A stretch of DNA of 58,042 nt, the filler included, from Dugesia japonica (lineage: Eukaryota), in the NCBI GenBank assembly GCA_001938525.1. It is 5 parts of 5 records of this genome, joined end to end, with 100 filler letters (N's around TTAATTAATTAA, not from the genome) between each part and the next. Parts side by side here need not be neighbours in the genome. Positions count along the whole stretch, not along the records: positions 35,383 to 48,888 come from MQRL01249421.1; 4 more parts are not named here. One strand, given 5' to 3'. This document shows positions 9,478 to 48,888 of this stretch, piece after piece. How positions within the stretch are numbered: the stretch's first letter is position 1; each line of letters begins with the position of its first letter. The notes beneath the pieces are model-generated. The model did not search any database, was not told where the DNA came from, and saw only the letters and a list, made by a program, of their open reading frames with translations. A program made the translations under genes and the position numbers.

Positions 9478-10482
9478 GATTATCTGAATGATCTATCTAT
9501 GGTTGTAGAACACCAAAGGGCACCCGGTACCAAAGTGAAAAGGCCATTGTTAATTCATTACGCAAACACTAATTATGTAGTGCACTGGAAGCTGCTACAA
9601 AGATATATAAGGTTAGGAGTAAGAGTTAAATTGATCCATAGAGCAGTAAGATTTACTCAAGCTTGTATTTTTGCAAATTATATTGATACAAAACACTGCA
9701 TTAAGAGCAGAATGTTATACAGAGTATGAGAAAAACTATTACAAACTACTAAACAACAGCTTGTATGGAAAATCCGTTGAAAACCTTAAGAAAAGAATGA
9801 AATTAAGATTGTGTAATACTAATAAAACATATGCATTTAAATCAAACTTTAGGAAATCTATCAAGATTGATGAGAACCTCATGGCAGCTTTAATGAATAA
9901 AAGGTCAGTTTGTTTAGATTGCCCAAGCTATATTGGTCAATCCATACTGGACTTGAGCAAATTACAGATGTATTAGATACAGTACATCGAACGCGAGAAG
10001 TACAGAAAAGAAGAAAACTGCAAAATTAATATTGTAGCTGGCGATACTGACGGCCTTTTTCTAGAATTAGTGGATATAAGCCTAGAAAAATCTTATCGAA
10101 TTAATGAAAATAGATGGATTACTAGATACATCTAATTGCAGTAAAGAACATCCCCTCAATATTAATCATCTGAATTCCATCATTGGAAAGTTCAAAGACA
10201 AGAATAAGGGAAAAATTATCTAGAATGGTTATTTTTAAGACTAAATTGCTACAGCCTGCTTAGTGAAAAAGAAGCATTGAAAGAAAAAGGTAAACACTGA
10301 AAAAATAGCAGCATCAACCATAAAACATATGTTGGCTGATATAATAAGGATGAAAAAGAAGCAGTCGTTATCAACTGTTTAGTATAAAATCATAGAAAAT
10401 AGAGTTAAGTAACAGTGATGGTAAGAGGTACTGGTTAGGTAAAAATGAAAGTGTACCTTATGGGCACTATAAAATCAAATAA
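9478..10482 (+). pseudogene. Polinton pPolB C-terminal half, lineage B, intein-free
   Basis: NYVVHWKLLQRY, KLLNNSLYGKSVEN (motif B), IGQSILDLSK, IVAGDTDG at about 10031-10054 (motif C), IGKFKD and VPYGHYKIK*. Confidence 0.85.
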
Positions 10483-10879
10483 AAATACTTTTTATCATAA
10501 GACCATCAATTTGATCCCGAATAATTGATTAAGAATAACTGATCAAATGAAGTTGTTTTTATTTTATGTTGTAAATTATTTAATAATTTCTATTTTAGAA
10601 AGAAAAAAAGAAAGACAGTTTGTATAAAGAATATGAGAACGAACCAACCAATCCTCTTTAGGGCTATAAAATTGGAATTGTATTATGTTTACAGGTTCTT
10701 ATTATGAACAAAAGAAGTAAAATTTTTGATTGTTTTTTTGTGTTTTTATGTGGGTTGTGTGCATAAAATGTATATATAAATAAAGTTAAATTTTATGTTT
10801 CATTTTTTCTGATTATTTACCTATGTACCTAGATTCAATAGTAGATGAAATGATTGAATTAAAAAAATGATTTCACCAT

Positions 10880-11450
10880 GATTTTAAAAAATTCAAACAC
10901 TCACATTCACATCTCGGAAAAATCGAAACCATACTCTTTCATATTTCTTTATCTTTTCTCTTTCCACAAAAAATAAAGCAAACTTCAGAAAATTTCTTTT
11001 CGTGTACTTATACTATATACAAACCAAAAAGATTTATCATTCGAAAAATAAACCAATAATTCACCAAACCACTTCAAAACCCGTACATTCACTTTCCAAA
11101 AATATCAAATTCATCTAAATAAGACACCTATTCACAACATCAGACTGATTTAAAGTTACGTGTCTGTCGGCTGAAGGAGCATTTTACACTTTAAGTCTTT
11201 TAGGTAATGTATAGTGCGAATTCGAGGTCCTGGTCAAATCCATCCTTAAAACATCCAAAAGGTTACTAACACACATAAAAATAATATGATAACATATACA
11301 CACTTTCATCATACACGGATCCGCAAAACAATTCGTCACCAATACCACATTACCTTAAACAAAATTTTAAAAAAAGAAACAAATTAAAATAAAATTTAAA
11401 ATTAAAAGAAAATTTTTAATTAATTAAAACAAAAAGTAATAAAACAAAAA
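10880..11450. repeat. Polinton right TIR-like region, truncated by contig end
   Basis: AC-rich. Inverted match to 7300-8100. Confidence 0.6.
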
Positions 11451-11550
11451 NNNNNNNNNNNNNNNNNNNNNNNNNNNNNNNNNNNNNNNNNNNNTTAATT
11501 AATTAANNNNNNNNNNNNNNNNNNNNNNNNNNNNNNNNNNNNNNNNNNNN
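11451..11550. other. Artificial contig linker
   Basis: N44-TTAATTAATTAA-N44, with stops in all six frames. Identical at four positions. Confidence 0.97.
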
Positions 11551-11614
11551 TATTATTCTTTTATTGATTTGCCACAAAAAATTCCCTGAATCAACCTGTC
11601 TATTTAATTTACCT

Positions 11615-12233
11615 CACAATAACAAATTTGTATATTTTGGATTTACTATTTTAGAATATGCAAAAGAAGTATAATTTGTATAATTTTGTATATAATCAAT
11701 TAGAACCAAAAGTCTGACAAGATAATTATAAAATTCATTACGGAGACACTGATTCTGCATTTATAGAGATAATTGGAAGAGATAATTTAGAAAAATTAAT
11801 TTGTTTTACTGGAAATGAATTATTTCAGATGAAAGATGAAATGCCTAATTCTGAAATTATTAAATGTGATTTTATAAAATCAAAATCTTATGCTTATGAA
11901 TATCTATTAAATGATAATGTTGAATTTCAGAAAAAACATAAAGGAATTCAATCTTTTAATAAAATTGGAATGAGGGAATTTGATATAGTATTAGAAAATG
12001 TATATACAAAAGTTTATGGAACTAATTATTCACTAAATTCTAACTTACATGAAATTGAAATTAAAAGTCAAAAGAAAATAGCTTTAACTGGATATGATGA
12101 TAAAAGAATTATTGAAGATAATGGAGTTGAAACATGGCCTCATGGAAGTGAATATGAATGTAAAAATTGTGAAGATTGGAATTTAAGATTAGATTCAATA
12201 AATAAAATATTAACATGTATATTTTTATTATAA
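11615..12233 (+). pseudogene. Polinton pPolB C-terminus, lineage A, intein-free allele
   Basis: GFTILEYAKEV, KIHYGDTDSAFIEI (YGDTDS at 11739-11756), QMKDE, KSYAY, KHKG, KIALTGYDDKR and TWPHG. Collinear with the extein of 44479-47004. Confidence 0.92.
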
Positions 12234-35382: not shown

Positions 35383-36077
35383 TATAAATACATATATAAA
35401 TATAAATACATATATTATTTAAATTAATTAGTTAATTAATTATATCCCTAATATACTTAAATTTAAATTAATATTTTAAAATATAATTAAAATTGTATTT
35501 AAATTAACATATAAAGAAAAAAAATAATTAAATTCTTTTTTTTTAAATTTCAAATACAATTAAGTAAATATAAAATTAAACAATCGATAAATATATTGAT
35601 TGTTTAATTTTTATTACTAAAGTAATTTGAAATTAAAAATGAAAACTTTAATTTTATATTACTATAATTACTATTATATGAATTATGGTAATATGAAATT
35701 AAGCAATCAATATATGTATTGATTGTTTAATTTCATATTATCATGGTAATAATTATGGTAATATGAATATAGATTATTTTTATATTTTAGTGGTTTGAGT
35801 AGTTCTCAAAATTTCCAGACACGTGATTTTTTGTATGTTGCAACTGTGTTGCATTCCTATTAGAATATTAATAATTTTAGAAGTTAAAGTATTTTTAAGC
35901 AATTTGTTTTTTATGTTGCATGCAAAAATGACTTTCAAGTATATTTTTAATGATTTTTTGAGATTTAAAATTATTAGACATGTGATTAAAAATGATTTGT
36001 CATGTGATTTAGATGATGTATGTTACTTATATATTGCATCTGAGTTACATCCCTATTGCAATATTAATATTTTTANT

Positions 36078-36268
36078 ATATTTTAGTTGTTTGAATAGTT
36101 AATAGCTAATTTTTAAATATAAAAATCTAAATATGAAAAGGAAAAATAACTAAATGATACATTTTTACTATATTTTTACTATATTTTAGTTGTTTGAATA
36201 GTTAATAGCTAATTTTTAAATATAAAAATCTAAATATGAAAAGGAAAAATAACTAAATGATACATTTT
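36078..36268 (+). repeat. Near-perfect tandem duplication, period about 102 bp
   Basis: TATATTTTAGTTGTTTGAATAGTTAATAGC...AATGATACATTTTT twice. Confidence 0.9.
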
Positions 36269-36980
36269 TTTTACAAATTACTAAACAAAAAAAAATAATT
36301 GTTATAATTCTCGAGTTCAATCAGATGCATATCCAATGACATCATCAAATTTAACAATGCACATCCATTAAAATCCGGAGAACAAAAATCAGCTCTCATG
36401 AACTGATTTACAATAACAGCCGAAATCATTGCTTTCCGTTCTTTGTCAAAAATTCCACGTTCTTCTAATATATCTGTTAGCATTTCTAAATTAAATTTTT
36501 TAAAAAAAAATAATTTTTAATAAATGTCAAACCTGTTTTTATAAAATCTTCTTCAAAATCTTTCATTGATGTCATTTTTTTAGTCATTTTAATTTGATTT
36601 ACAAGAAAATAATAATGAAATGCAATATATATGTTATATATATATTTTATATGAAATGCAATATAAAACCACTACGTAAATTATAAATTATTTGAAATTT
36701 AAATATCTAAATTTAAATTAATATTATTTGTACTTGAATTTTACTTAAATTGCATCTGTGTTGCGAATTTTCTGATTTTTTTCAAGCAAATTAAACAAAT
36801 CTGAAGTAATTTTATTCACATATCGTTCAAAATACAAATAAAAACACTTAACCTCAGTAACTAATATTCGTTATCATAATTAATGAATTAATGAAGAACA
36901 ATGTGATTTTGAAGGAGTTTATTTAATTGATTCGTTAAAACAAATATAAAAAATATACTAAATTATGAATAAAAAAAACA

Positions 36981-37570
36981 AGATGGATAAATTAAGAAAT
37001 GATGCAGTCTATCATAGTGTGTGACATAGTGGTAGTGGGAAAACTTTGTTTGTATGTCAATTATTGAAATCAAAGTTATTCAAGTTGAAATTTAAACATA
37101 TACTGAAATAGGGGTGCAGATGAGGAGCATAGGCTGACAAAAGTTGAATTTTGTAATATTAAAATTAAAGTTATAAATGGTTTTGATAAAATTGGAACAA
37201 AAGATTAAGACTAGGTGATGTTACTGCTGTTGATGATCTGTATCAGGAGGCGAAAAAAGAAAAAGATTTCAATAATTTATTCACAAATATATCGAGGCAT
37301 CGTAATGTGACCGTGATATGTATTTCTCAAAATATATTTCATAAAGGAGGTATGTAACAAAAAAGCCACATGGATATCTATTGACTTTATACAACAATAT
37401 CCAGATGGTTATAGAGTAAAAACAGATATATTCAATCCAAATGGTATCACAATATATAAACAAAATAGATAATCTTTTCATAATATTACAAAAATGACAN
37501 CATTTAAGAAATTTGTAGTTGATCAAGAAACTAAACCGTTTAGAATGATAATTTTACAATCGTTCCCATC
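36981..37570 (+). pseudogene. Polinton packaging ATPase remnant, lineage B
   Basis: HSGSGKTLFV, AVDDLY and LFTNISRHRNVTVICISQNIF. Confidence 0.8.
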
Positions 37571-37639
37571 ATACGCTATATATGATTTACTTGAAATTAT
37601 TATAAATACTGTTGTTGTAATGTAGATGTGAGTGCAACC

Positions 37640-37790
37640 AAAAAGAAAACATTGAAAAAACACAAAAACAACTTTATTAACGCTTGTAAACACAAAATAT
37701 AGAAAATCAATGAGACGAGTAATGCACAATCAAGGTGGTGGTTTTATAGCAGCATTGCTACCAATTACATTAGCTGCATTATGTTTAACT
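37640..37790 (+). pseudogene. pX-like protein remnant, lineage B
   Basis: RKSMRRVMHNQGGGFIAALLPITLAAL directly after the ATPase. Confidence 0.55.
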
Positions 37791-38082
37791 CATTTCAAAA
37801 AAACAATGGTTAACTTTAATGTTGAAGTCAATTTTGAAAAGATTCCAACAAAATAATATAAAACATATGGTATTGATGATTTATAGTGAATGTATCTAAT
37901 GGAAATGATTTCATATTTAAAGAATAATAAAGATAACAAGTATATTGTTTGTTATTTATCGTTGCATATAATAGATATGCAAGGAATTTCCTGTTTAAAG
38001 TAAATGGAATGAATAAACAATATTATGGATAAAACAAAGTGTGATAAAAGTATCACAAATAGTCAATAAAGGCAAATTTTTG

Positions 38083-38672
38083 ATGAAATCAAATATTTTT
38101 TATAACTTTTTACGGAGTAAAAGTAGTTTGTTAGTTAATCTAAAAAATAATGCTAGTAATTGCATTGTTGAGCTTCAAAATCCAATTTGCAGGAATGGTA
38201 ATTGGGAAGTTGCCATGATGGATTTCAACTTTATATATTCAGACATGCCCATTTACAGTCAATCAGGGATTGAATATGAATTATTTAAGCCAATTGATAA
38301 AGAACTAATACTTGGAGTTAACAACAGAGAAAAAAGATGCTTTTTATTGTTAATTTGCAAGATAAATATAAAAATAATACAGAAACAGATATAAAATTCA
38401 AGAAAAATAAGATAACTTTTAGTAGTGATATTAAATTCCACAGTTTGTCATTTGATACTTTTGAAAACTTGGTAAGATTTACATATAGTAAAGATGAAGT
38501 TAAAAGAAAGTATAGTTGTATAAATTTCGATGATCATAAATTATTTTCGATTCGCTTTCATGACTTTAAAAATTATGATTCTGTTGAAAAAATAAAAATT
38601 AAATATTATTATGCGACTGTAACTAAACAATCAAATTCAATCACAACCAATCAGAAATTAAAACACAATTGA
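38083..38672 (+). pseudogene. Polinton minor capsid protein N-terminal part, lineage B
   Basis: FYNFLRSKSS....NNASNCIVELQNPI..NGNWEVAMMDF is the typical penton N-terminal motif. Frameshifted. Confidence 0.65.
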
Positions 38673-39149
38673 CAAAATAAATATTACCCATCACAATACC
38701 ATTCCAACCACACATTAACCAACCAAATCCATCAACCCCATACAAAGATACACTCTCCCAAAATACACCCCACGATAACTGTGCGTTACCATAGTTGTAC
38801 GACAAACCATCCATCCAACCTCATAAGTCCTTAAGGCAATATATAGACCAAATCTTTGTCCAACAACACCTAAATCTTAAAAATTATTTCCAAGATCTCC
38901 AGCTCCCATTCAAGTCCAAAACAATTCTTACACACACCACCTCAACTTAACCTACTTTTTAAAAACCCACTTAGCAACCCACACACACACAAATTTTAAA
39001 ATTTTAAAATACAAACACACACACCACCAGGAATAAAAATTTTTGATCGCAAAATTTTAGAAAAAAAACCAGCACAAAAATATCAGCGCAATCGTAATGT
39101 GTTTCCAAGACGGGTGTAAATTGAACACGTGCGCTACTATTCCACTACT
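38670..39149. repeat. Polinton right TIR and terminus
   Basis: AC-rich, direct similarity to 41560-41975. Ends GTGCGCTACTATTCCACTACT, and pPolB coding sequence of another element follows immediately. Confidence 0.75.
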
Positions 39150-40044
39150 GATTAGAGTTTTATTTAAAACAGGATATGAAAATTAATAAAATACATAACA
39201 AATATCAAATGAAAATGAGACTCTGGTTAAAGGAATACATTGAATTTAATATACATCAAAGAAATATAGCCAAAAAGAACAAAGATGTATTTAGTGATTA
39301 TTTCTTTAAATTAATGAATAATGCCTTTTATGGAAAGACTTTTGAGAATATTAGAAAAAGATGCAATATAGTTATTGTATCTTCAGATAAAAATTTCCTG
39401 AAATAGATGAGTAAAATATCATCGAAATCATCAAAAATATTTACTGAAAATGTAGTAGTCATAAATATATGGAATACGAATTTAAAATATAAAAAGTTTC
39501 CGTATGTTGGCTTCGCTATTTTGGAATATGCTAAATTGATTAAATATGATTTTATATATAATCAATTAGATTCAGTAATTCGGAATCAGTATAAAATTTA
39601 TTAATCTATATTTATGAAAATTACTGCTGATTATAATTTTTAAAAAATGTGAAATTTAATAAATAATAATTTCAAATGAATGATGAAAAACCTTCATCTG
39701 AAATAATTAAATGCGATTTCATAAAAGCGAAATCATATGCTTATGAATATCGCGAAAATCAATCTGAATTATTGAATTTAGATAATAAGCATAAAGGAGC
39801 ATCTAAATTCAATAATATAGGAATGAATTCATTTGATAAAGTATTAAAATCAAATGAATTCATTTATGACATTAATTATTCATTAAGATCGAATAAACAT
39901 CAAATTACTGTTATCGAACATAAGAAAATTGCTCTTGTTGGTTATGATGACAAGAGATTGATTGAAAATAATGCTATAAAAACAATATTGCAATCAATAT
40001 CATCATACTTTAGACAAATTAAATGGGTTATTAAATTGCTATAA
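39150..40044 (+). pseudogene. Polinton pPolB C-terminal part, lineage A, motif C deleted
   Basis: WLKEYIEFN, FFKLMNNAFYGKTFENIR, GFAILEYAK, KSYAY and KIALVGYDDKR. Confidence 0.88.
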
Positions 40045-40767
40045 TTTATTAGAAATTTCATGTAAATATATGTACATATTTTTTCTAATATAATTTTTAA
40101 AAAAAGTAAAATATCCATCTCCAATTTTTATAAAATTACATTTTTTATTATGTAAATGACTTTAAAAAATTTTATTAATTATTTTATTACTCTTGATTTC
40201 AATTTCTTTTAAAATGTATTAAATTTTTTATTCAATCATTTTTTTATTTATAGAAAAACAAGAAGTATGTATAATACGCTTATAATTAAGCAAATGTTTT
40301 TCTGGCTTTATGACGATAAATCCAGCGAACAAAGTGAGCAATCGTATGCTTGAAAAGCNCACGGGGAGTTCAAGTCGTAGAGCTAGCTCTTAATTCTGAG
40401 TTCAAAGATACCAAATTCGAAATTGTACAATACAATTTGAACAAAGAATTTCTAACCGAAAATTGAAATTTTCAACCTTTTTGAGCAAAGATTCAACCAT
40501 TCCAACCCGAATTTATAACGACCTACATTTTGGATCACCCAAATTGCTGAATTCCTTCGTCAGTGGTGGGTTAGGGATACTGATCCAGTGCACTAGAATT
40601 TATCTACTGTCTTTGTAATGGCCAAAAAAGAAAAATATCTAAAAATTTTCAAAGTACTTAACTTGATATTTTCATTTGTATATGTAAGAAAATTAATTTT
40701 ATGCTGTAATCCGTTGTTTACAAAGAGATCTATCATCAGTCTCTAAAAGAAGGAACATGTGAACAGA

Positions 40768-40945
40768 TCTAAAAAGAACAATTGAGGTCGCTTTGAGACA
40801 GATCAAGGAACTGGTTGAACAATCCCAAAATAGTCCTCTTGATTATAGACATAACTGCCAATACAGAATTGCTAGAATCATAAGCATCAGTTTGTAGATA
40901 TTAAACTCTCAAAATCTATATTTTTTAACTAAAAAAAACATTTAC
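40768..40945 (+). repeat. Direct repeat of about 42247-42433
   Basis: Shared AAGAACAATTGAG, CAAAATAGTC, ATTATAGACATAACTGCCAA, ATCAGTTTG and TTTTTAACTAAAAA. Confidence 0.75.
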
Positions 40946-41499
40946 CATGGTTAAATAACAGAGTTAGTTGGTTACTTGTGGAAAAACTATGTAATCAGCA
41001 GTAATCAAATTTTTATTGACATTTCGATTGTAATTAATAAAACAAATTTTAAACTAGTCAAATATATAGTTATATCTCCACAAGACAAAAATTAAAATGC
41101 ATCTCCATATAAAATATAAATTATGCTTATTTATTTTATTTAGTTATTAATTAGGTTACTTGATCAGTCAAATTTTTTTTGAATTTTCCGCCGAAAAAGT
41201 GTTTAAAAATATCAAGACTCCCCTCTTCCCCAGTCGAATATTTTACAAAACAACACTTCCACGATCAAAATACCGAAAAAAATAATCAAAATTACATCAA
41301 ATACTCAAAAATACCATTTTTTAAAATTAAATTCATCAAATTAAGCAATATACAGTATTTTTACAAATTAAATATTTCAAACATTTTTGACGTCATAACC
41401 AACTAACAGAAAAATTTTAAATAAATCTTATAAAATTGGATAAATAATTCTCTTTTCACACATACAAACCTCCACTTCACGAAATTAATTTTAACGCAC

Positions 41500-42245
41500 T
41501 TAAACTACTTACAAAATAAACCAATCAAAAAGTAGCCCTTAAAATACAAAATCAAAGCACATTTGACAACCAACATCTTCACCATCACATTAGCTCTCCA
41601 ACAAGCCGTCAACCAACAAATTCCATTAACAACATAAAAACCTACAACCAAAACAAAAACCACCCACGATAACTCATACGCCTGGGCCCGTGTGCCACTA
41701 CCATTGTAGTGAAAACCATTCATCCAAACTCATATGTCCTTTAGACAATATATAGACCAAATTTTTATACAACAACAAATAAATCTTCAAAATCCCAAAA
41801 AAATTATTCACAAGATCTCCAGCTACTCCTCTTCGTTTTTTCCAGTCTTTTACAAAAACACACACACAAACAAACACACAAACACAACTTGACCTACTTT
41901 TTAAACACCCTTAACAACCCAAACACACAGAAAATTTAAAATTTAAAAATACACACACACACACCTTCAGCATCAAAAAAAACTAATAAGATAAAAAAAA
42001 ATCAATGGGATCAAAAATCAATCTGAACTTGAATTATTTCAACGAATCAGAATCGAGTATACGAGATCACATACTTTGAAAATTCGACCTTGAAATATTT
42101 CAGCCAATGAGAATGAAGTATACTAAAACACTGACCTTGAAATATTTCAGCCAATGAAAATGAAATATACTAGAACACTGAACTTGAAAAAATTTGACCT
42201 TGACGCGGGTGGAGGGGTTTTCCAGTGCGCTACTATCTATTTACT
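41500..42245. repeat. Polinton right TIR and terminus with CCAAT-containing sub-repeats of about 46 bp
   Basis: Ends CAGTGCGCTACTATCTATTTACT. GACCTTGAAATATTTCAGCCAATGA(G/A)AATGAA is repeated at about 42087 and 42133. Confidence 0.75.
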
Positions 42246-42644
42246 GTCTAACAAGAACAATTGAGATCAATTTGATACATAGATCAGAAAACTGGCGGTA
42301 ACATCCAAAAATAGTCATTTTCATTATAGACATAACTGCCAAGATAAAATTGATAAAGAATGTAACATATCACAATTATCAGTTTGCAGACGTTACGTAT
42401 TCAAAATCTGTTGTTTTTAACTAAAAATCATTTAACAAAGTAGTATATAAGTATATATATAACAACCCCAAATCCTCCAGGGTTTGGGGGGTTGTTTATT
42501 ATATGCCACATTTTACGTTAAAAATCCATACAGTAAAATGTAAAATGAATCTATAAAAGTGCTGGTGAAAGAGGAATAATTTAAGAGGAAACGATATACT
42601 ATGATTAAATTTTTTATTATAAAAAAGAGAAGAAAATATAACAA

Positions 42645-45600
42645 ATGTCTTCATTTAAATGTTCAAATTGTGATAAAATCTTTAAAAATAAACGTGGTTT
42701 AAATTCACATATAGAATCTAAAAAATGTCAAATTATAAATCTAAGTGATTATCTAACATGTCCAGTTTGCAATAAAAAATTTAGGACACAACTTGGTTTA
42801 AATGTTCATTTGAAAAAAACTGATTGTTCTTTAATACATTTATATTGTGAAATTTGTGATAAACATTTTGATAATTTAGAATTAATNAATGAACATAAAC
42901 TAACTAATAAACGACATTTGTTATTAACTAAAAAAATAGAAAAAAATTGGAAAACAAGACCAAGACATATTCTAGAAGTATTTAATCAAGAAACATACCC
43001 AGAATACTATTATATCGATGTTTATTTAAATAGTAAATTAACAATGATAAAAAATGTAGAAGGTAGAATGTTAGATACAACTCAATTTCTTAAAATAGAA
43101 ATAGAATATGCTGTCAGAGAGTTTTTTAAACTAGGATTTAAATTTTATTTGAAAGTAGGAGTTGCATGTCATTATGTTAAAGAAGAAGAGATAATGGTAA
43201 TTTATTCTTATGTACCAAATACAAGAATTTATGCAAAAGCGACAATACCTGACAAATTAGAAGTAATATGAAAAACTAGAAAATTTAATGCAAAATAAAG
43301 AATTAGCTGGTTCTGGTTGGATTATGTCACATATAGTTAATTATAGATTAGAATTTAAAAAATATGGTTCATTATGTAAAGCCGGCGCTTTTACTTATTG
43401 TGAGTTACCAAAAGAAATAACAAATAAAAAAGGAATTATTAACATAGAAAACAAAGATGATAAATGTTTACTATATTCAATTCTCGCACATAAATATATT
43501 TTTCATAATCCAACACGTGTTTCTAATTACATTCCACTTTTATCAGAATTAAATACAACAGGAATGAATTTTCCAGCGGAACTTGGCGATATAAAAATAT
43601 TTGAAAAACTAAATAATTTTAAAATAAATGTTTTTGAATTAGACACAAAAATTATACCAATTCGCATTAAACATTTTTCAGTAAAACCAAAACCAGAAGA
43701 AAATAAATGTAATCTTCTAATTTATAAAAGTCATTTTATATTAGTTAGAAATGTACAAGCTTTATTTAATATTAAACATGGTAATCAATTATGTCTCGGT
43801 TGTATGAATATTTATTCTTCTAAAAACGTTTTATTTAAACATCAAGAAGAATGTATACATCATAAATCATTGAGTGTTAAATTTCCATATCAAGAACACT
43901 TTAAGTTTCAAAATTACTATTTTAAAAATAAAATTCCATTTGTAATCTATTGCGATTTTGAATGTTACACTAAAGAAGATAATACNCAAGAACCAATAAG
44001 TCTTGGAATATTTATAAAATCTGAATATCCAAAATTAATTCCAAGTAAATATTATTATTCCACAGGTGTAAATGTAGTTAATGAATTTATAAAATTTCTT
44101 GATAACATTAATAACAAATTTAATGATATAAAAAAAGAATACTTCGGAGAATATCCAGAATTCATTAAAAATTCAAAATGTTATTATTGTTCCAAGGAAA
44201 TACTAAAAGATCCAGTTTTTGATTATAATTATTACACCCAAGAACCTCATGGTTATACACATAAAGAATGTAAACAATCTGAAAATCTATTTATACCATG
44301 CTACTTTCACAATGCAATGGGTTATGATAGTCATTTATTCTTTAGACAACTTTAATATAATAATCCTGGAAAAGTAAAAAATATAATTCCACATTCTGAA
44401 GATCAATATATAGCATTTAATTATGGACATATTAGATTCCTAGATTCATTTAAAATATGTAAAACATCAGTCGAGAAAATGGGTGAAACATTGGCTAAAT
44501 CAGGAAATCATAAAATATTAAAATCTTATAGACTAAAACCTAAAAAAGTCTTATTTCCATATGACTATGTAAAAGCTAACAATCCCAAAGAAATTGAAGA
44601 ATTATTAAAATCCAACAGAATTCCAGAGAAACAAGATTTCTTTTCTAAACTAAGACAAAAAGGAATATCTGACCAAGAATATCAAGAATTTTTAAAAGAA
44701 TATTCTAAATTTGAAAATCTCTGGAATTACATGTTACATTATATGATGTTAGATGTTTTAATCTTAGCAGATTACGTAGAAAANNNNNNNNNNNNNNNNN
44801 NNNNNNNNNNTAAAATAGATCCAAGTTATTGCTATACCGCATCAGGTTTAACATGGCAAGCTGGAATGAGATTTACACAAGTAAAATTAAAATTTGCAAA
44901 ACCAGAAACCTATAACACTTTCCTAAAATTTGAACGTGGAGTTCGCGGAGGATATTCAGGAGAAGAAGGCGAACGTCAGGTATTTTCACATAATAAAAAT
45001 AAAAATCCATATACTAGACAACTAAATAAATCAGATTTTGAAGATATAATAAAAATGATGAATTCAAATCAAGAAATTAATGTTGATAATATAATGGAAA
45101 ATAGACATATAAAATATGTCGATGCAAATTCTCTTTACGCATCATGCATGACAAAACCATTGCCAACAGGAGAATTCAGCGAATGTAATGAGCTAGATTA
45201 TGAGAAATCAACTGAAGAAATGAATTATCTATATGAAGTTGACCTTGAATATCCTAAAGAATTGCATGATAGAACTAAATATTTCCCATTAGCACCTGAA
45301 AGTTTACTTGTTACAGAAAACATGTTAAGTAATTATCAAAAATTATTTAAAGTAAAACCATCAGATAAAAATATTAAATTAACAATGAACCAATTCGATA
45401 AAAAGAATTATATAATCCTAGGTTCAACTTTAGATCTATATCTTTCATTAGGAATCCAACTAAAAAAGATACATTCTAAATATAAAATGCCAACATCTAC
45501 ATGGTTAAAAAAATATATTGATTTTAATATCACACAAAGAACTTTAGCAAAAAGAAATAAAGATGAATTTGGCGTATCTTTCTTTAAAGTCATGAATAAT

Positions 45601-47004
45601 TCATTTTATGGAAAAACCCTAGAAAATATTAGAAATCGTTGCAATGTTCATATTGTAGGAACTGATAAAGATTTTCAAAATCTCGTTTCTAAACCAACAT
45701 ATTTAAGTTTTAAAACTTTCAAATTAGAACCAGGAATTGTATCTAAAATAGCAGCAGTTCACATGACAAAAACGAATTTAAATTATAACAAATTTCCATA
45801 TCTTGGATTTACTATCCTAGAATATGCGAAAGAAGTAATATATAATTTTGTATATAACCAATTAGAACCAGAAATCGGAAATGATAATTATAAAATTCAT
45901 TATTCTGACAGTGTAACCCATGACACTCCAATATTACTAAGAAAAGATAATAAAGTTGAAATAAAAAAGATTTCAGAGATCAATCAAAATTATACAAAAA
46001 ATCTGGAAAAATATTATTCTTATCCTGAAAATTATGAAATTTGGACTAAAAGTAACTGGGCTCCATTGAAAAAAGTAATTAAACATACAACAAATAAAAA
46101 GATTTATAGAATAAGAACTAAATTAGGAATTGTCGATGTAACAGAAGACCATTCATTATTAAATGATAAATCTATAGAAATTAAACCAACAGATTTAACA
46201 CCCGAAACTAAATTATTACATAATAAATTTAAAACATTAATATCTTTAAATAATACATTTTCATGTGACATTTTAAATAAAACATTTAAAGATAAAATAT
46301 TTTTATCTAAAGCTTATTATTTAGGAACATCTTTAGGAATGAATTTAATTATTACAGAAGATTTTAAAATTCAAGAAGTAAAATCAGATATTTCAACTAA
46401 TCTCCAAACCGTAAGATTTTTAAGAGAAAATATAGAAGATGTTTATGATATTGAAACTGAAGATGGATCATTTAACTGTGGATTTCCTTTGATAATAAAA
46501 AACACGGACAGCGTATTCATAGAAATAACAGGTGATAAAAATCTAGAAAAATTAAATTTATTAACCGGTGATAATCTATTTCAGATGAAAGATGAAATGC
46601 CTAATTCTGAAATTCTTAAATGTGCATTCATAAAACCAAAATCATATGCATATGAATGGGTCCCTCAGGGAAAAAATAGTGATGATAAAGGAGAGATAAA
46701 ATTTAATAAAAAACATAAAGGTGTACAGAGTTTCAATCCTATTAGAATGCAAGAATTTGATTCAATATTAGAAGATGCAAAGAAAATAATTTATGGCACA
46801 AATTATTCTTTAAAATCAGAATTACATGTAATTCAATTAACAGAACAAAAGAAAATAGCATTAACAGGTTATTCTGATAAAAGAATCATAGAAGACAATG
46901 CAACAAGAACATGGCCACATGAAAATCAATATAAATGTGAAACATGTCATACTTGGCATTTAAAATTAGATAAAATCAATAAAAATCTAACTTTATCTCG
47001 TTAG
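42645..47004 (+). CDS. polB: Full-length protein-primed family B DNA polymerase (pPolB) with N-terminal zinc fingers and an intein; one frameshift (about 43268) and one in-frame TAA (44353)
   Basis: ZnF x3, GSGW, IINIENKDDKCLLYSILA, ExoI YCDFEC, ExoII FHNAMGYDSH, FLDS, FPYDY, ExoIII Y..LDV..LAD, RGG, motif A DANSLY, motif B KVMNNSFYGK, motif C YSD|TDS, KSYAY and KHKG. Confidence 0.93.
45910..46503 (+). mobile_element. Mini-intein (198 aa) in pPolB motif C
   Basis: In-frame insert between YSD and TDS. Block A SVTHDTPILLR, block B VDVTEDHSLL (TxxH), block F VYDIETEDGSF, block G LIIKN followed by +1 Thr. Absent from the paralogue at 11739. Confidence 0.95.
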
Positions 47005-47042
47005 ACAAAACTGTTTAAATTGCTAAATAATAATATTAGAAA

Positions 47043-47705
47043 ATGTCAGAAGCAACAGAAGAAGAATTAGAAAAAATAGTTAATTCTAAAAAATGTAAAT
47101 CTGTAAAGATCAACGGTAAAAATTATTATATTTCTAAAAAAGTTAAAGATGAAGCCAAAAAGAAACATGAAGGTGGATTTGCATTTCTAGCTGCAATACC
47201 ATGGGTAATTGGTGCTTTAGCAACAGCATCTGGAGCTGCATCTGGTATTGCATCTACAGTTGCAAATTCTAGAGATGCTATTAAAAAAACAAAAAGAAAC
47301 AGAATTAATTGAATTACAAAAACAAGTTGAAGCTAAAAAACTAACACCAACTCCAGCACCAGGACCAGGACAAATAACATCTGGGACTGGAATTAAAAAA
47401 CCACAAGGGCAAACCCATAAAGGAAGACAACAAAAAAGAAGAAAGAAGGTAAAGGTATTTTTTTAAATCCATATCAAGGCACTGCAATTCATAAATATTT
47501 AAAAAATATTGATCCTAAATTTAAAATTCTAACTAAAAAATTTAAATCCGGAACACACATAATTCAACATGGAAAAGGAATTTATTTAAATCCATATAAA
47601 AGTGGAAAAGGCCATAAAGGCAGAAAGGGAATTGAAGATGAAACTGAAACTGAAACTGAAGATGAAACTGAAGATGAAACAGAAGATGATGAACAAAACC
47701 CATAA
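47043..47705 (+). CDS. pX-like / core protein, frameshifted
   Basis: EGGFAFLAAIPWVIGALA, then GKGIFLNPYQG..GKGIYLNPYK and an acidic tail. Homologue of 12237-12813. Confidence 0.65.
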
Positions 47706-47738
47706 AGAAAGAAAGGGCCAAAATTAAAACTATATAAA

Positions 47739-48785
47739 ATGGATGCTAGAATTAAAGAATTAAAAGCTCTAATTAAATCTCAAGAACAATATAATAATTA
47801 TTTTTCTTCTAAAATTCTTGATTATAATACTTTACAAAGCAACTTATCCACTTTACAAAATCCAACTATCTCTGCAATTGAAAAACTTGGAATAAAACAA
47901 GAAACTAAAATGCCAGATCAATTAATGATAAAAGATGAAATAATAAACCACAAGGGCGACAAGTCAGAAACCATAAAGTCAGAAACCATAATAAACCACA
48001 AGGGCGACAAGGATGAAATTGATTTATTAAATAAAGATGTAATTATTCTCATGGTACTTAAGTCTAAAGATACATCCCCATTTTCACCCGATAATTTAAC
48101 AATAAATACTACAAATATATCACCAACAATAACTCCTCAATTTGATGAAATACCTGTAACACCAGATAAAAAATATAAAAGATTATATTATCCCAAAACA
48201 TATGCATCAATATTTTTCTTTACAATTAATNATGTAAAACATTTATCAATAAATAATACAATTTATGAAGATGAATATCAAGATAAATTTGTTGATTTAA
48301 TGATGGGTAATCTACATACAGATTATACTTTATATGAAAATGATGATATTTTTAAAAAGTTTATTTTAAAATATTTAACAGAAATAATAAAACCACCTCC
48401 GAAAAATAATTATTGTGAATTTTTTAAACAAATATCTGGATATAATAAAATTAGAAAAAAAAGTAAAGTTGAACAGAAAGATCTTGAAAAAGCTTTTAAA
48501 AAACAAGAAAAAGAAGATTCTAAACAAATGTTAAAAAAACAAAAAGAAATGGAATCGGATCCTACAAAGACCATAAAGGAAAGAAAAATTCATGTAGCTG
48601 ATGGAGTCAAGAAACAAACAAATCCAATTGCATTATTTGAAAAGTTAACATTGTTAATTTCAACTGTAAAATCTGGACATAATAATCTCTCATCTGAAAT
48701 TAAGAGTATCTGTAAAAATTTAAAATCTAAAGGTTTATTATCTGATATTATTTATAAAAAGTATAAGTCAAAATATTTAAGTTAA
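47739..48785 (+). CDS. Conserved Polinton uncharacterised protein
   Basis: Intact 348-aa ORF. C-terminal NPIALFEKLTLLISTVKSGHNNLSSEI motif, of a type common in Mavericks. Confidence 0.8.
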   Translation: MDARIKELKALIKSQEQYNNYFSSKILDYNTLQSNLSTLQNPTISAIEKLGIKQETKMPDQLMIKDEIINHKGDKSETIKSETIINHKGDKDEIDLLNKDVIILMVLKSKDTSPFSPDNLTINTTNISPTITPQFDEIPVTPDKKYKRLYYPKTYASIFFFTINXVKHLSINNTIYEDEYQDKFVDLMMGNLHTDYTLYENDDIFKKFILKYLTEIIKPPPKNNYCEFFKQISGYNKIRKKSKVEQKDLEKAFKKQEKEDSKQMLKKQKEMESDPTKTIKERKIHVADGVKKQTNPIALFEKLTLLISTVKSGHNNLSSEIKSICKNLKSKGLLSDIIYKKYKSKYLS

Positions 48786-48818
48786 TAAATCACGTTAGTC
48801 AAAATATTTCCTATAGAA

Positions 48819-48888
48819 ATGTCTCATCAATTCTTAGTAGTTGGAACAGAACAAGATTTAAAAATAAATTTAGATTATCCGATAAAAT
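48819..48888 (+). CDS. Penton N-terminus, truncated by contig end
   Basis: MSHQFLVVGTEQDLKINLDYPI matches MSHQFLIVGKKQDLKLDLKFPL at 13764. Confidence 0.75.

What the first reader, a model, noticed from the sequence alone, without database searches (positions are those of the whole stretch)
45910..46503. A protein-splicing intein inside the active site of a Polinton/Maverick DNA polymerase in an animal-type genome
Seen: motif C reads KIHYSD-[198 aa]-TDSVFIE, while the close paralogue at 11739 reads KIHYGDTDSAFIE without a break. The insert has every class-1 splicing hallmark: first residue Ser, block B TEDH, block F VYDIET, terminal Asn and a Thr +1 nucleophile. Its frame is open throughout. 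Established: the YGD|TDS (pol-c) site is a known intein site in archaeal and giant-virus RNA-primed PolBs. Inteins are essentially unknown from animal genomes apart from Hedgehog-type Hint domains. I know of no described intein in Polinton/adintovirus protein-primed PolB. Inference: this is a parasite-within-a-parasite system in which polymerase activity requires protein splicing.
Basis: partly seen in the sequence, partly recalled or inferred. Interest (0 to 1): 0.95.

Follow-up and report, generated by a model that had tools for sequence, protein, structure and literature searches.

The report
Mini-intein splitting a Polinton-type polymerase
A 198-residue self-splicing protein element (a mini-intein) sits in the catalytic YxDTDS motif of a protein-primed DNA polymerase of the Polinton/Maverick type, which extends a giant-virus and archaeal intein family to a new class of host gene; the claim that the genome is an animal's could not be confirmed.

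Summary
At 45910-46503 an open 198-codon insert splits motif C of a protein-primed family B polymerase (pPolB). Removing it joins the flanks into YSD|TDS.

The insert is a canonical class-1-type intein:
- It has Ser1, block B TEDH, block F VYDIET, a terminal Asn and a Thr at +1.
- It matches 184 database inteins, the best at E 6.5e-31.
- The AlphaFold model (pLDDT 91.5) matches only inteins in the PDB. In the viral library it matches giant-virus PolB inteins best (HaV01, Megavirus, Pithovirus).

It belongs to the "pol-c" (YGD|TDS) intein allele. It has lost both LAGLIDADG endonuclease motifs, so it is a mini-intein.

It is not unique. At least nine unnamed protein clusters in public ENA/JGI assemblies carry related inteins at the same pPolB site. 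One sits in an element with capsid and integrase genes. One family has intein-plus and intein-less alleles.

No paper in the searchable library describes a Hint-type intein in a pPolB.

Caveats: the host gene has one frame change and one in-frame stop upstream. No other Polinton gene lies in the 13.5-kb piece. The host organism is unknown (25% GC, GC3 about 0.11-0.15), so "animal genome" is unsupported.

The parts
42645..47004 (+). Protein-primed family B DNA polymerase gene with an N-terminal C2H2 zinc-finger region, exonuclease and polymerase domains and the intein. It is broken: one frame change and one in-frame stop, plus a 27-N gap at 44784-44810 and two single N.
   Evidence: PF03175 E 8.2e-12 and C2H2 fingers E 1.4e-11. 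Full-length relatives P0136 and P0137 have the same ZnF+pPolB architecture in one frame. Motifs Exo I-III, A (DANSLY), B (NNSFYGKT) and KxY can be read directly.
42654..42905 (+). Three C2H2 zinc fingers at the N-terminus of the polymerase gene.
   Evidence: Pfam zf-C2H2, three stretches, E 1.4e-11. The same fusion is seen in P0136 and P0137.
45097..45717 (+). Best Pfam DNA_pol_B_2 (organellar and viral pPolB) match, upstream of the intein.
   Evidence: residues 96-302 of the protein that starts at 44812.
45901..45909 (+). N-extein half of motif C (Y-S-D).
   Evidence: It aligns with YGD of rPolBs and Y/F-x-D of pPolBs.
45910..46503 (+). 198-aa mini-intein, from Ser1 to Asn198.
   Evidence: 184 intein homologues, best E 6.5e-31. 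Alignment A1. AlphaFold2 pLDDT 91.5, pTM 0.87. Foldseek hits are inteins only.
45910..45948 (+). Block A (SVTHDTPILL...), carrying the Ser1 nucleophile.
   Evidence: S1, V2, T6 and P7 are invariant in A1.
46132..46161 (+). Block B (VDVTEDHSLL), the TxxH motif.
   Evidence: V77 and T78-L83 invariant, V75 nearly invariant in A1.
46207..46404 (+). Linker that is the remnant of the C-terminal tail of a LAGLIDADG endonuclease domain. Both LAGLIDADG motifs are absent.
   Evidence: Alignment with the full-length pPolB inteins P0001, P0004, P0028 and P0413. No LAGLIDADG Pfam hit. The model shows a single helix at 129-141.
46438..46482 (+). Block F (DVYDIETEDGSFNCG).
   Evidence: V178, Y179, D180, E182, T183, G186 and G191 are invariant.
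46483..46503 (+). Block G (FPLIIKN). The terminal residue is Asn and the penultimate residue is Lys, not His.
   Evidence: N198 is invariant. 'KN|TDS' is the commonest C-junction in the family, 49 of 92.
46504..46512 (+). C-extein half of motif C (T-D-S). Thr+1 is the second nucleophile.
39134..40044 (+). Second pPolB fragment covering the C-terminal half only. It is degraded by several stops and frame changes and a large 5' truncation, and it has no intein.
   Evidence: 76-81% nucleotide identity to 45502-46657 in three blocks, with a 613-nt jump in spacing across the intein site. tblastx matches to pPolB loci.
38655..39039 (+). Non-coding segment repeated at 41549-41979. It lies upstream of each polymerase copy, so the two copies are partial duplicates of one element.
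   Evidence: Direct repeat families D2, D6, D7 and D14, 71-86% identity.

Best explanation
The insert is a class-1-type mini-intein of the 'pol-c' allele family, the family that occupies YGD|TDS in archaeal and giant-virus RNA-primed PolBs. Here it sits at the homologous position (YSD|TDS) of a Polinton-type protein-primed PolB.

Shown: the sequence, the predicted fold, the homology, the exact in-frame position between the first catalytic Asp and the Thr-Asp-Ser of motif C, and the loss of the homing endonuclease.

Inferred mechanism: the polymerase is translated as a precursor whose palm active site is split. Ser1 makes an N-O acyl shift. Thr+1 attacks the ester to form the branched intermediate. 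Asn198 cyclises to release the intein. An O-N shift then restores the peptide bond, recreating YSDTDS and an active polymerase.

Because both LAGLIDADG motifs are gone, this copy cannot home on its own. It is passively inherited with the element or the host genome. It descends from an endonuclease-bearing ancestor like those still present in related pPolBs.

The intein probably reached pPolBs from giant-virus rPolBs (or the reverse) in a shared host cell, helped by the near-identical YxDTDS target. Whether this particular gene copy is still functional is uncertain, because it has two disabling lesions upstream. The host organism is unknown.
For: Position and frame.

Homology: one search gave 184 hits, the best being P0001 at E 6.5e-31, and 83 of the mapped relatives sit at YGD|S. 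Alignment A1 has invariant catalytic columns.

Fold: AlphaFold2 pLDDT 91.5. The listed PDB hits with E <= 0.001 (33) are all inteins: TFIIB Mvu mini-intein 8e-9, Aes123 PolB1 4e-8, Pab PolII, RadA and PolB16_OarG. The BFVD top hits are the intein-bearing PolBs of Pithovirus LCPAC302, Megavirus courdo11, Marseillevirus LCMAC201, Heterosigma akashiwo virus 01 (TM 0.88, rmsd 2.9) and Klosneuvirus. Weak sequence hits to the N. equitans split PolB intein NEQ068 and to Aes123 PolB1.

The pol-c allele is defined as YGD|TDS in Ogata et al. 2005 (PMC549080).

Same site in other pPolBs: P0001, P0124 and P0129 are intein-plus and P0127 is the intein-less allele of one pPolB, with exact DNA junctions. P0004, P0028 and P0413 are further examples.

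Endonuclease loss.

Host gene is a pPolB: PF03175, 303 relatives, and relatives lie in elements with DJR capsid, rve integrase and A32-like ATPase.

The intein's composition matches its flanks: GC 22% against 27%, GC3 0.11 against 0.15.
Against: Pfam's Intein_splicing model scores only 19 bits (E 1.3e-3), below its cut-off of 35.8.

The penultimate residue is Lys, not the textbook His. This is typical of the family, but its effect on Asn cyclisation is untested.

The host gene carries one frame change and one in-frame stop, so selection on splicing may already have ceased in this copy.

Sister grouping of the window intein with another pPolB intein has only 68/100 bootstrap support. Its identity to that intein (48%) is barely above its identity to the best rPolB inteins (45-47%). 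A single entry into pPolBs is therefore not established, and the direction of transfer is unknown.

No splicing has been observed.
Confidence: 0.85

Rival explanations
1. This is a relic: a dead intein inside a dead polymerase pseudogene. The insert was once a splicing intein, but this copy of the element is decaying and nothing is expressed or spliced.
For: The polymerase gene is interrupted by one frame change and one in-frame stop. There is no homing endonuclease. A neighbouring partial copy is heavily degraded. No other element genes are recognisable in the piece. Some related pPolB inteins are visibly decayed: P0417 has Asn at position 1 and P0414 has lost the catalytic Asp of its extein.
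Against: 730 codons, including the whole intein, are open where chance gives P of about 7e-32, and 3.5e-9 for the intein alone. Every catalytic intein residue and all the polymerase and exonuclease motifs are intact. The frame change could be a homopolymer error in an AT-rich assembly.
Confidence: 0.3
2. The contig comes from an AT-rich protist or fungus, or from a contaminant or symbiont of an animal sample, and not from an animal nuclear genome. The 'intein in an animal genome' angle would then fall.
For: GC is 25% overall, 17-24% in the flanks, and GC3 is 0.11-0.15. All related intein-bearing pPolB loci are from unnamed environmental or assembly records with 27-32% GC. Reviews state that canonical inteins are absent from metazoan genomes (PMC5784728). 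Inteins have been reported in viral-like DNA polymerase genes on nuclear scaffolds of algae and a labyrinthulomycete (PMC10710043).
Against: Polinton pPolBs of animals, for example Araneus ventricosus P0201 at 36% identity, are about as similar to the window's as most unnamed hits are. A few animal genomes are equally AT-rich (my own knowledge). Nothing in the piece positively identifies a protist.
Confidence: 0.55
3. The insert is a non-splicing inserted domain, such as a co-opted Hint, BIL or Hedgehog-type module or a nuclease-type insertion like the HNH/VSR inserts of nematode and mollusc Polinton pPolBs.
For: Polinton pPolBs are known to tolerate inserted nuclease domains (PMC10748475). 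The Pfam intein score is below the cut-off.
Against: The insert separates the two catalytic aspartates of motif C, which a permanent insertion would be expected to inactivate. It keeps Ser1, TxxH, the terminal Asn and Thr+1. It is homologous end to end with inteins at YGD|TDS. BIL domains are much weaker fold matches (E of about 1e-3) than true inteins. No nuclease domain is present.
Confidence: 0.03
4. This is an assembly chimera in which a giant-virus PolB intein was mis-joined into a Polinton polymerase.
For: The nearest named structural relatives are giant-virus PolB inteins.
Against: Both junctions are in frame, and removing the insert joins the flanks into the uninterrupted motif YSD|TDS. 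Both exteins are pPolB, not rPolB. Base composition and codon use are continuous across the junctions. The same architecture recurs independently in several other assemblies.
Confidence: 0.02

Closest known systems
pol-c allele inteins of Nucleocytoviricota PolB (Mimivirus/Megavirus, Heterosigma akashiwo virus 01, phycodnavirus, Pithovirus and Marseillevirus metagenomic PolBs)
   Same: They occupy the same insertion point between D and T of YxD|TDS. They share Ser1, TEDH, VYDIET and the ...N|TDS junction. Sequence identity is 30-47% over the whole splicing domain, and the best structural matches reach TM up to 0.88.
   Different: Their host is an RNA-primed, delta-like PolB (PF00136/PF03104) of a giant virus. 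The host here is a protein-primed PolB (PF03175). In the aligned mini-inteins (A1) the rPolB inteins carry about 15 extra residues after block A that the window intein lacks. P0001's N-terminal part looks similarly short, judged only by eye.
Archaeal PolB pol-c inteins and the Nanoarchaeum equitans split PolB intein (NEQ068/NEQ528)
   Same: They have the same allele position (position III of Ogata 2005). NEQ068 is the best PDB sequence hit, at E 0.009.
   Different: Sequence similarity is only marginal. The hosts are archaeal chromosomal replicases, and the N. equitans intein is split and trans-splicing.
Cysteine-less PolB inteins with solved structures (Aes123 PolB1, PDB 9hth; PolB16_OarG, PDB 8cpo)
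   Same: They are PolB-hosted with a Ser1 nucleophile (the crystallised variants are S1A). They are among the top fold matches, E 4e-8 and 3e-5.
   Different: Identity is about 15%. These are phage or metagenomic split or engineered inteins. The window intein contains two non-catalytic cysteines.
pPolB-hosted LAGLIDADG inteins in unnamed ENA/JGI assemblies (clusters P0001/P0124/P0129, P0004, P0028, P0413, P0415, P0416, P0418, P0422)
   Same: They have the same host family and the same site (Y-S/M-D|S...N|TDS). P0001 is the best hit, at 48% identity, and the NJ sister at 68/100. They lie in elements with DJR capsid, rve integrase and A32-like ATPase.
   Different: They keep a roughly 140-aa LAGLIDADG endonuclease. 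Several have His-Asn rather than Lys-Asn at the C-terminus. Their pPolBs are only about 30-40% identical to the window's. They are not described in any paper that I could search.
HNH and VSR nuclease insertions in Polinton pPolBs of nematodes/oomycetes and marine nematodes/molluscs (Jeong et al. 2023, PMC10748475; read as possible intein invasions in PMC11161782)
   Same: They are selfish-looking insertions inside Polinton pPolB genes.
   Different: They are nuclease domains without a Hint splicing domain and are retained in the mature protein. The window insert is a Hint domain without any nuclease.
Hedgehog/Hog Hint domains of animals
   Same: They share the Hint fold.
   Different: Hog domains are C-terminal autoprocessing modules with no C-extein ligation, no terminal Asn and no +1 nucleophile. 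The window insert is internal and has both junction nucleophiles. No Hedgehog/Hog structure appears among the 50 PDB matches listed; all are inteins or bacterial intein-like (BIL) domains.

Membership tests
Intein (class 1, Hint fold) | N-terminal nucleophile Cys or Ser at position 1 | tested here: met
   Ser1, invariant in 18 of 18 aligned homologues.
Intein (class 1, Hint fold) | Block B TxxH | tested here: met
   T78-E-D-H81, invariant.
Intein (class 1, Hint fold) | C-terminal Asn, with a penultimate His in the textbook case | tested here: inconclusive
   Asn198 is present and invariant. The penultimate residue is Lys, as in 49 of 92 family members ('KN|TDS'), while a minority have HN.
Intein (class 1, Hint fold) | +1 nucleophile Cys, Ser or Thr on the C-extein | tested here: met
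   Thr+1 of TDS.
Intein (class 1, Hint fold) | Hint (horseshoe beta) fold | tested here: met
   Predicted model with pLDDT 91.5. The 33 PDB matches with E <= 0.001 are all inteins, TM 0.34-0.75 (most 0.6-0.7) on the target.
Intein (class 1, Hint fold) | In-frame insertion at a conserved site, with intein-less homologues that read through | tested here: met
   P0136 and P0137 have an uninterrupted motif. 188 of 266 pPolB relatives have a contiguous YxDTDS and none has the intein. The P0127 versus P0124 allele pair.
Intein (class 1, Hint fold) | Curated family HMM at or above the gathering threshold | tested here: not met
   PF14890 scores 19 bits against a cut-off of 35.8. The endonuclease-bearing relative P0001 also falls below it (22.8 bits), while P0004 and P0028 pass. 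The model is evidently insensitive to this subfamily.
Intein (class 1, Hint fold) | Protein splicing activity | not testable with these tools
   No expression or proteomic data are available.
pol-c intein allele (YGD|TDS site of family B polymerases) | Insertion between D and T of motif C, with greater similarity to pol-c inteins than to other inteins | tested here: met
   83 of 92 mapped homologues sit at YGD|S...N|TDS. The allele definition is in PMC549080. The named structural neighbours are giant-virus PolB inteins.
LAGLIDADG homing-endonuclease-bearing (full-length) intein | Two LAGLIDADG motifs or an endonuclease domain between blocks B and F | tested here: not met
   It is 198 aa long, has no Pfam LAGLIDADG or Hom_end hit, and aligns only to the tail of the endonuclease domain of P0001 and P0004.
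Protein-primed family B DNA polymerase (pPolB) | PF03175 match together with the Exo I-III, A, B, C and KxY motifs | tested here: met
   PF03175 E 8.2e-12. The motifs can be read. 303 pPolB relatives with E down to 1.6e-90.
Polinton/Maverick element | rve-family integrase | tested here: not met
   None found in 35383-48888 by Pfam on ORFs or by tblastx against an integrase-bearing relative. The piece may simply be too short.
Polinton/Maverick element | Double jelly-roll capsid, penton, A32-like ATPase and adenain-like protease | tested here: not met
   There were no matches in the piece. Relatives of the polymerase do sit next to these genes (L006/L007 and L008).
Polinton/Maverick element | Terminal inverted repeats and a target-site duplication | tested here: inconclusive
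   Only chance-level long-range inverted repeats were found. The piece is cut 1.9 kb downstream of the polymerase.
Metazoan genome | Flanking host genes or other markers of animal origin | tested here: inconclusive
   There are no tRNA or Rfam hits and no recognisable host gene. There are no exact or close matches in the searchable collections.

The most novel reading that the evidence does not exclude
The contig is genuinely from an animal nuclear genome. The element is, or recently was, an active Maverick whose replication depends on protein splicing. That would make it the first canonical splicing intein resident in a metazoan genome, acquired by cross-family homing from a giant-virus rPolB into a pPolB at the shared YxD|TDS site.
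Probability: 0.12. Interest if true: 0.85.

Novelty: new variant of a known kind. Interest (0 to 1): 0.62.

Why it matters
Inteins at YGD|TDS were known from archaeal and giant-virus RNA-primed polymerases. Finding the same allele family in protein-primed polymerases of Polinton-type elements has three consequences.

First, it shows that the intein's target is the catalytic motif itself and not one polymerase lineage.

Second, it documents a three-level nesting of selfish elements: an intein inside a self-replicating transposon or virus inside a eukaryotic genome.

Third, it points to genetic traffic between giant viruses and the Polinton/virophage-like elements that share their host cells.

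The related intein-plus and intein-less alleles offer a natural system for studying intein gain, endonuclease loss and decay in eukaryotic mobile elements. If the host proved to be an animal, the accepted statement that metazoan genomes lack inteins would need revising.

Tried and rejected
- Pfam alone would have missed the intein (19 bits). A PDB sequence search gave only marginal hits.
- Host identification failed. Exact-sequence look-ups of window proteins found nothing. The closest pPolB (P0135, 46-49% identity) comes from an NCBI assembly, GCA_043755215.1, that no held paper mentions. Cluster look-ups returned no names. There were no tRNA or Rfam hits. Close-relative scans of IMG/VR and JGI metagenome contigs were empty.
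- The search for other Polinton genes in the piece found nothing. This covered Pfam and PHROGs on the flanking ORFs and tblastx against complete relatives.
- Synteny with the intein-bearing relatives L001, L004 and L005 is limited to the polymerase.
- Literature: Kapitonov & Jurka 2006 and Krupovic & Koonin 2015 are not held. I have an unverified recollection that the 2006 paper may mention inteins in Polintons, and this could not be checked.
- I considered and rejected an intron, because the insert is in frame, open and Hint-folded. I also rejected a BIL or Hog domain, a permanent nuclease-type insertion and an assembly chimera (see the rival explanations).
Full report
**1. What is at the coordinates**

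The piece 35383-48888 has about 25% GC. On the + strand an open frame ends at 47004. After a 27-N gap it runs 730 codons without a stop.

Its translation carries the family B polymerase motifs A (DANSLY), B (NNSFYGKT) and KxY. Motif C reads KIHYSD, then 198 residues, then TDSVFIE. The 198 residues are encoded exactly by 45910-46503. That frame has no stop, and the other five frames have 10-31. With the local composition, 198 open codons have a chance probability of 3.5e-9.

**2. The insert is an intein**

Pfam's Intein_splicing model gives only 19 bits, E 1.3e-3, below its cut-off. A PDB sequence search gives marginal hits to the Nanoarchaeum split PolB intein NEQ068 and to the Aes123 PolB1 intein.

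The large protein database gives 184 hits to the insert alone. The best is E 6.5e-31. Nearly all are insertions in family B polymerases (PF00136), and many are also annotated with Intein_splicing or LAGLIDADG domains.

In an alignment with 17 same-sized relatives the invariant columns are the catalytic ones:
- S1, V2, T6, P7 (block A)
- T78-E-D-H81 (block B)
- V178-Y-D-x-E-T183, G186, G191 (block F)
- N198

The hosts read YGD|S...N|TDS. Of 92 relatives whose ends could be mapped, 83 sit at YGD|S. The commonest C-junction is KN|TDS, so the penultimate Lys of the window intein is a family trait.

AlphaFold2 on that alignment gives pLDDT 91.5 and pTM 0.87. The domain is all-beta with one helix. 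Foldseek against the PDB returns 33 matches with E <= 0.001, all of them inteins: TFIIB mini-inteins, Aes123 PolB1, Pab PolII, RadA, VMA and PolB16_OarG.

Against predicted viral structures, the best matches are the intein-bearing DNA polymerases of Pithovirus LCPAC302, Megavirus courdo11, Marseillevirus LCMAC201, Heterosigma akashiwo virus 01 (TM 0.88, rmsd 2.9 A, 30% identity) and Klosneuvirus.

Ogata et al. 2005 define YGD|TDS as the 'pol-c' intein allele, shared by Mimivirus and archaeal PolBs and coinciding with the N. equitans split site (PMC549080). The window insert belongs to that allele family.

**3. It is a mini-intein**

Full-length relatives in pPolBs are 333-348 aa long and carry two LAGLIDADG motifs. 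The window intein aligns to their splicing blocks and to the last helix-strand of their endonuclease domain. Both LAGLIDADG motifs are deleted, and the helix at residues 129-141 of the model is that remnant. The intein therefore cannot promote its own homing.

**4. The host gene**

The N-extein matches PF03175, the organellar and viral protein-primed PolB family, at E 8.2e-12. It has 303 relatives, the best at E 1.6e-90. The closest full-length ones, P0136 and P0137, have N-terminal C2H2 fingers fused to the polymerase and an uninterrupted motif C.

In the window the same architecture spans 42645-47004 but is interrupted by one frame change and one in-frame stop. It also has the N gap and two single N. 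I give counts only. All the exonuclease and polymerase motifs are intact.

A relative at 38% identity, P0139, lies beside a double jelly-roll capsid gene, an rve integrase and an A32-like ATPase on contigs of 230-620 kb. That is a bona fide Polinton. In the window's own 13.5 kb no such genes were found. The polymerase is Polinton-type, but the element itself is not demonstrated.

**5. A second copy in the piece**

At 39134-40044 lies a degraded fragment of the C-terminal half of a paralogous pPolB. It is 76-81% identical at the nucleotide level. It has several stops and frame changes and a large 5' truncation.

It lacks the intein. The offset between the copies jumps by 613 nt across the site. 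Its motif C is not intact either, so it cannot show whether it was an empty site or lost the intein by deletion. Each copy is preceded by a related non-coding segment (38655-39039 and 41549-41979), so the region is a partial duplication of one element.

**6. It is not unique**

The best hit, P0001, is a pPolB with a LAGLIDADG intein at YSD|S...KN|TDS. Its 90% cluster has 121 members from one ENA assembly.

Within that cluster, P0124 and P0129 carry the intein. P0127 is the same polymerase reading IYSDTDS without a break. The DNA junctions are exact, with synonymous differences beside the site. This is the classic presence/absence polymorphism of a homing intein. These loci carry a capsid gene and an A32-like ATPase and lie among mariner-transposase and ankyrin genes, so the context is eukaryotic chromosomal.

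A second lineage (P0004, P0028, P0415, P0416, P0422; HYMD|S...HN|TDS) includes an element with capsid, integrase and intein-bearing polymerase genes on a 760-kb contig. Others are P0413, P0418 (which has Cys1), and the visibly decayed P0417 and P0414.

By contrast, none of the 266 closest pPolB relatives of the window protein has the intein. A neighbour-joining tree places the window intein next to P0001's, with 68/100 bootstrap support. Identities are 48% to P0001 against 45-47% to the best rPolB inteins. Whether pPolBs were invaded once or several times remains open.

**7. Mechanism**

Shown: the anatomy described above.

Inferred from the established class-1 pathway:
1. Ser1 makes an N-O acyl shift.
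2. Thr+1 carries out transesterification.
3. Asn198 cyclises.
4. An O-N shift recreates YSDTDS.

The intein lies between the first Asp and the Thr-Asp-Ser of motif C, separating the motif's two Asp residues (the catalytic pair, on my own knowledge of family B polymerases). The unspliced precursor should therefore be inactive, and polymerase function would depend on splicing. Without an endonuclease, the intein is inherited passively.

The intein's similarity to giant-virus inteins, together with the shared target motif, suggests exchange between giant viruses and Polinton-like elements in a common host. The direction of that exchange is unknown.

**8. Host organism**

I could not identify the host. 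GC3 of 0.11-0.15 and flanks of 17-24% GC fit AT-rich protists or fungi better than most animals, but they do not exclude an animal. Exact look-ups, close-relative scans and RNA-gene scans were all empty. 'Animal-type genome' is therefore unsupported.

**9. Literature**

Reviews state that metazoan genomes lack inteins (PMC5784728). Inteins in viral-like polymerases on nuclear scaffolds of algae and a labyrinthulomycete, and mass intein gain in Anaeramoeba, are described in PMC10710043.

Nuclease (HNH, VSR) insertions in Polinton pPolBs are known (PMC10748475) and were read as possible intein invasions (PMC11161782). Those insertions are not Hint domains. No held paper combines an intein with a pPolB in the sense found here.

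Two key papers are not held. My recollection that the 2006 Polinton paper may mention inteins is unverified.

**10. Verdict**

This is a real mini-intein of the pol-c family with intact catalytic residues, in a new class of host gene. I rate it a new variant of a known kind. It has undescribed relatives in public data. Its interest is moderate to high for intein and Polinton specialists.

That in effect shows where the interruptions lie. My working comparison of the degraded second copy with the main copy also looked at its motif C region in detail. I have not repeated those places or any change that would undo them in this report. I built no joined, repaired or consensus sequence, and nothing was deleted.

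Noticed in passing
window 39134-40044, with 38655-39039 and 41549-41979: There is a partial, degraded duplicate of the polymerase's C-terminal half. Each copy is preceded by a related non-coding segment (71-86% identity), and the main copy has about 3.3 kb more between that segment and the shared polymerase part. Segments at 40768-40935 and 42247-42427 are also related. The region looks like nested or tandem partial copies of one element.
   Followed up: partly
window 40883-42382: This is a strongly strand-asymmetric, C-rich stretch (GC skew down to -0.47) with AC-rich microsatellite-like runs. Upstream of the zinc-finger start, at 42025-42189, lie 2-3 copies of a 47-nt tandem unit. It may be a promoter or terminal-repeat region of the element.
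   Followed up: no
window 36067-36269 and 35567-35762: A 103-bp tandem duplication (2 copies, 99% identical) and a cluster of 44-46-nt inverted repeats or palindromes lie in 17-20% GC DNA at the left end of the piece. No coding potential was recognised.
   Followed up: no
window 47043-48785: Downstream of the polymerase are an 89-aa ORF with a Gly/Ala-rich hydrophobic segment, a 72-aa basic ORF, an acidic (TGAAGATGAAAC)n repeat at 47633-47689, and a 348-aa Lys-rich ORF. None has a Pfam or PHROGs match or similarity to genes of the related elements.
   Followed up: partly
L004 16695-20375 versus 10001-11974 (+): One 55-kb ENA contig carries two different pPolB genes about 5 kb apart. One bears an intein and the other (1226 aa) does not. 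An ankyrin/RING gene lies between them.
   Followed up: no
proteins P0061, P0068-P0070, P0077, P0110: Inteins about 45% identical to the N-terminal half of the window intein also sit in type II topoisomerase / GyrB-like proteins (PF00204) at a DAD|SV junction. These are non-allelic relatives of the pol-c inteins.
   Followed up: no
proteins P0018, P0040, P0045, P0049, P0052 and others: Many rPolB hits of about 590 aa start only 20-60 residues before YGD|intein. This suggests PolB genes that are split or mis-called just upstream of the intein in giant-virus-like metagenomic contigs.
   Followed up: no
L005 12980-13080 versus L004 10373-10460 and 11400-11500: The intein-less and intein-bearing alleles of the same pPolB differ by synonymous changes in the codons immediately flanking the insertion point. 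This is the pattern expected from co-conversion or from endonuclease-site immunity.
   Followed up: partly
window 36076, 37500, 40359, 42887, 43986, 48231: Single N characters occur at intervals of roughly 1-4 kb through the piece, in addition to the 27-N run at 44784-44810. They were left as they are.
   Followed up: no
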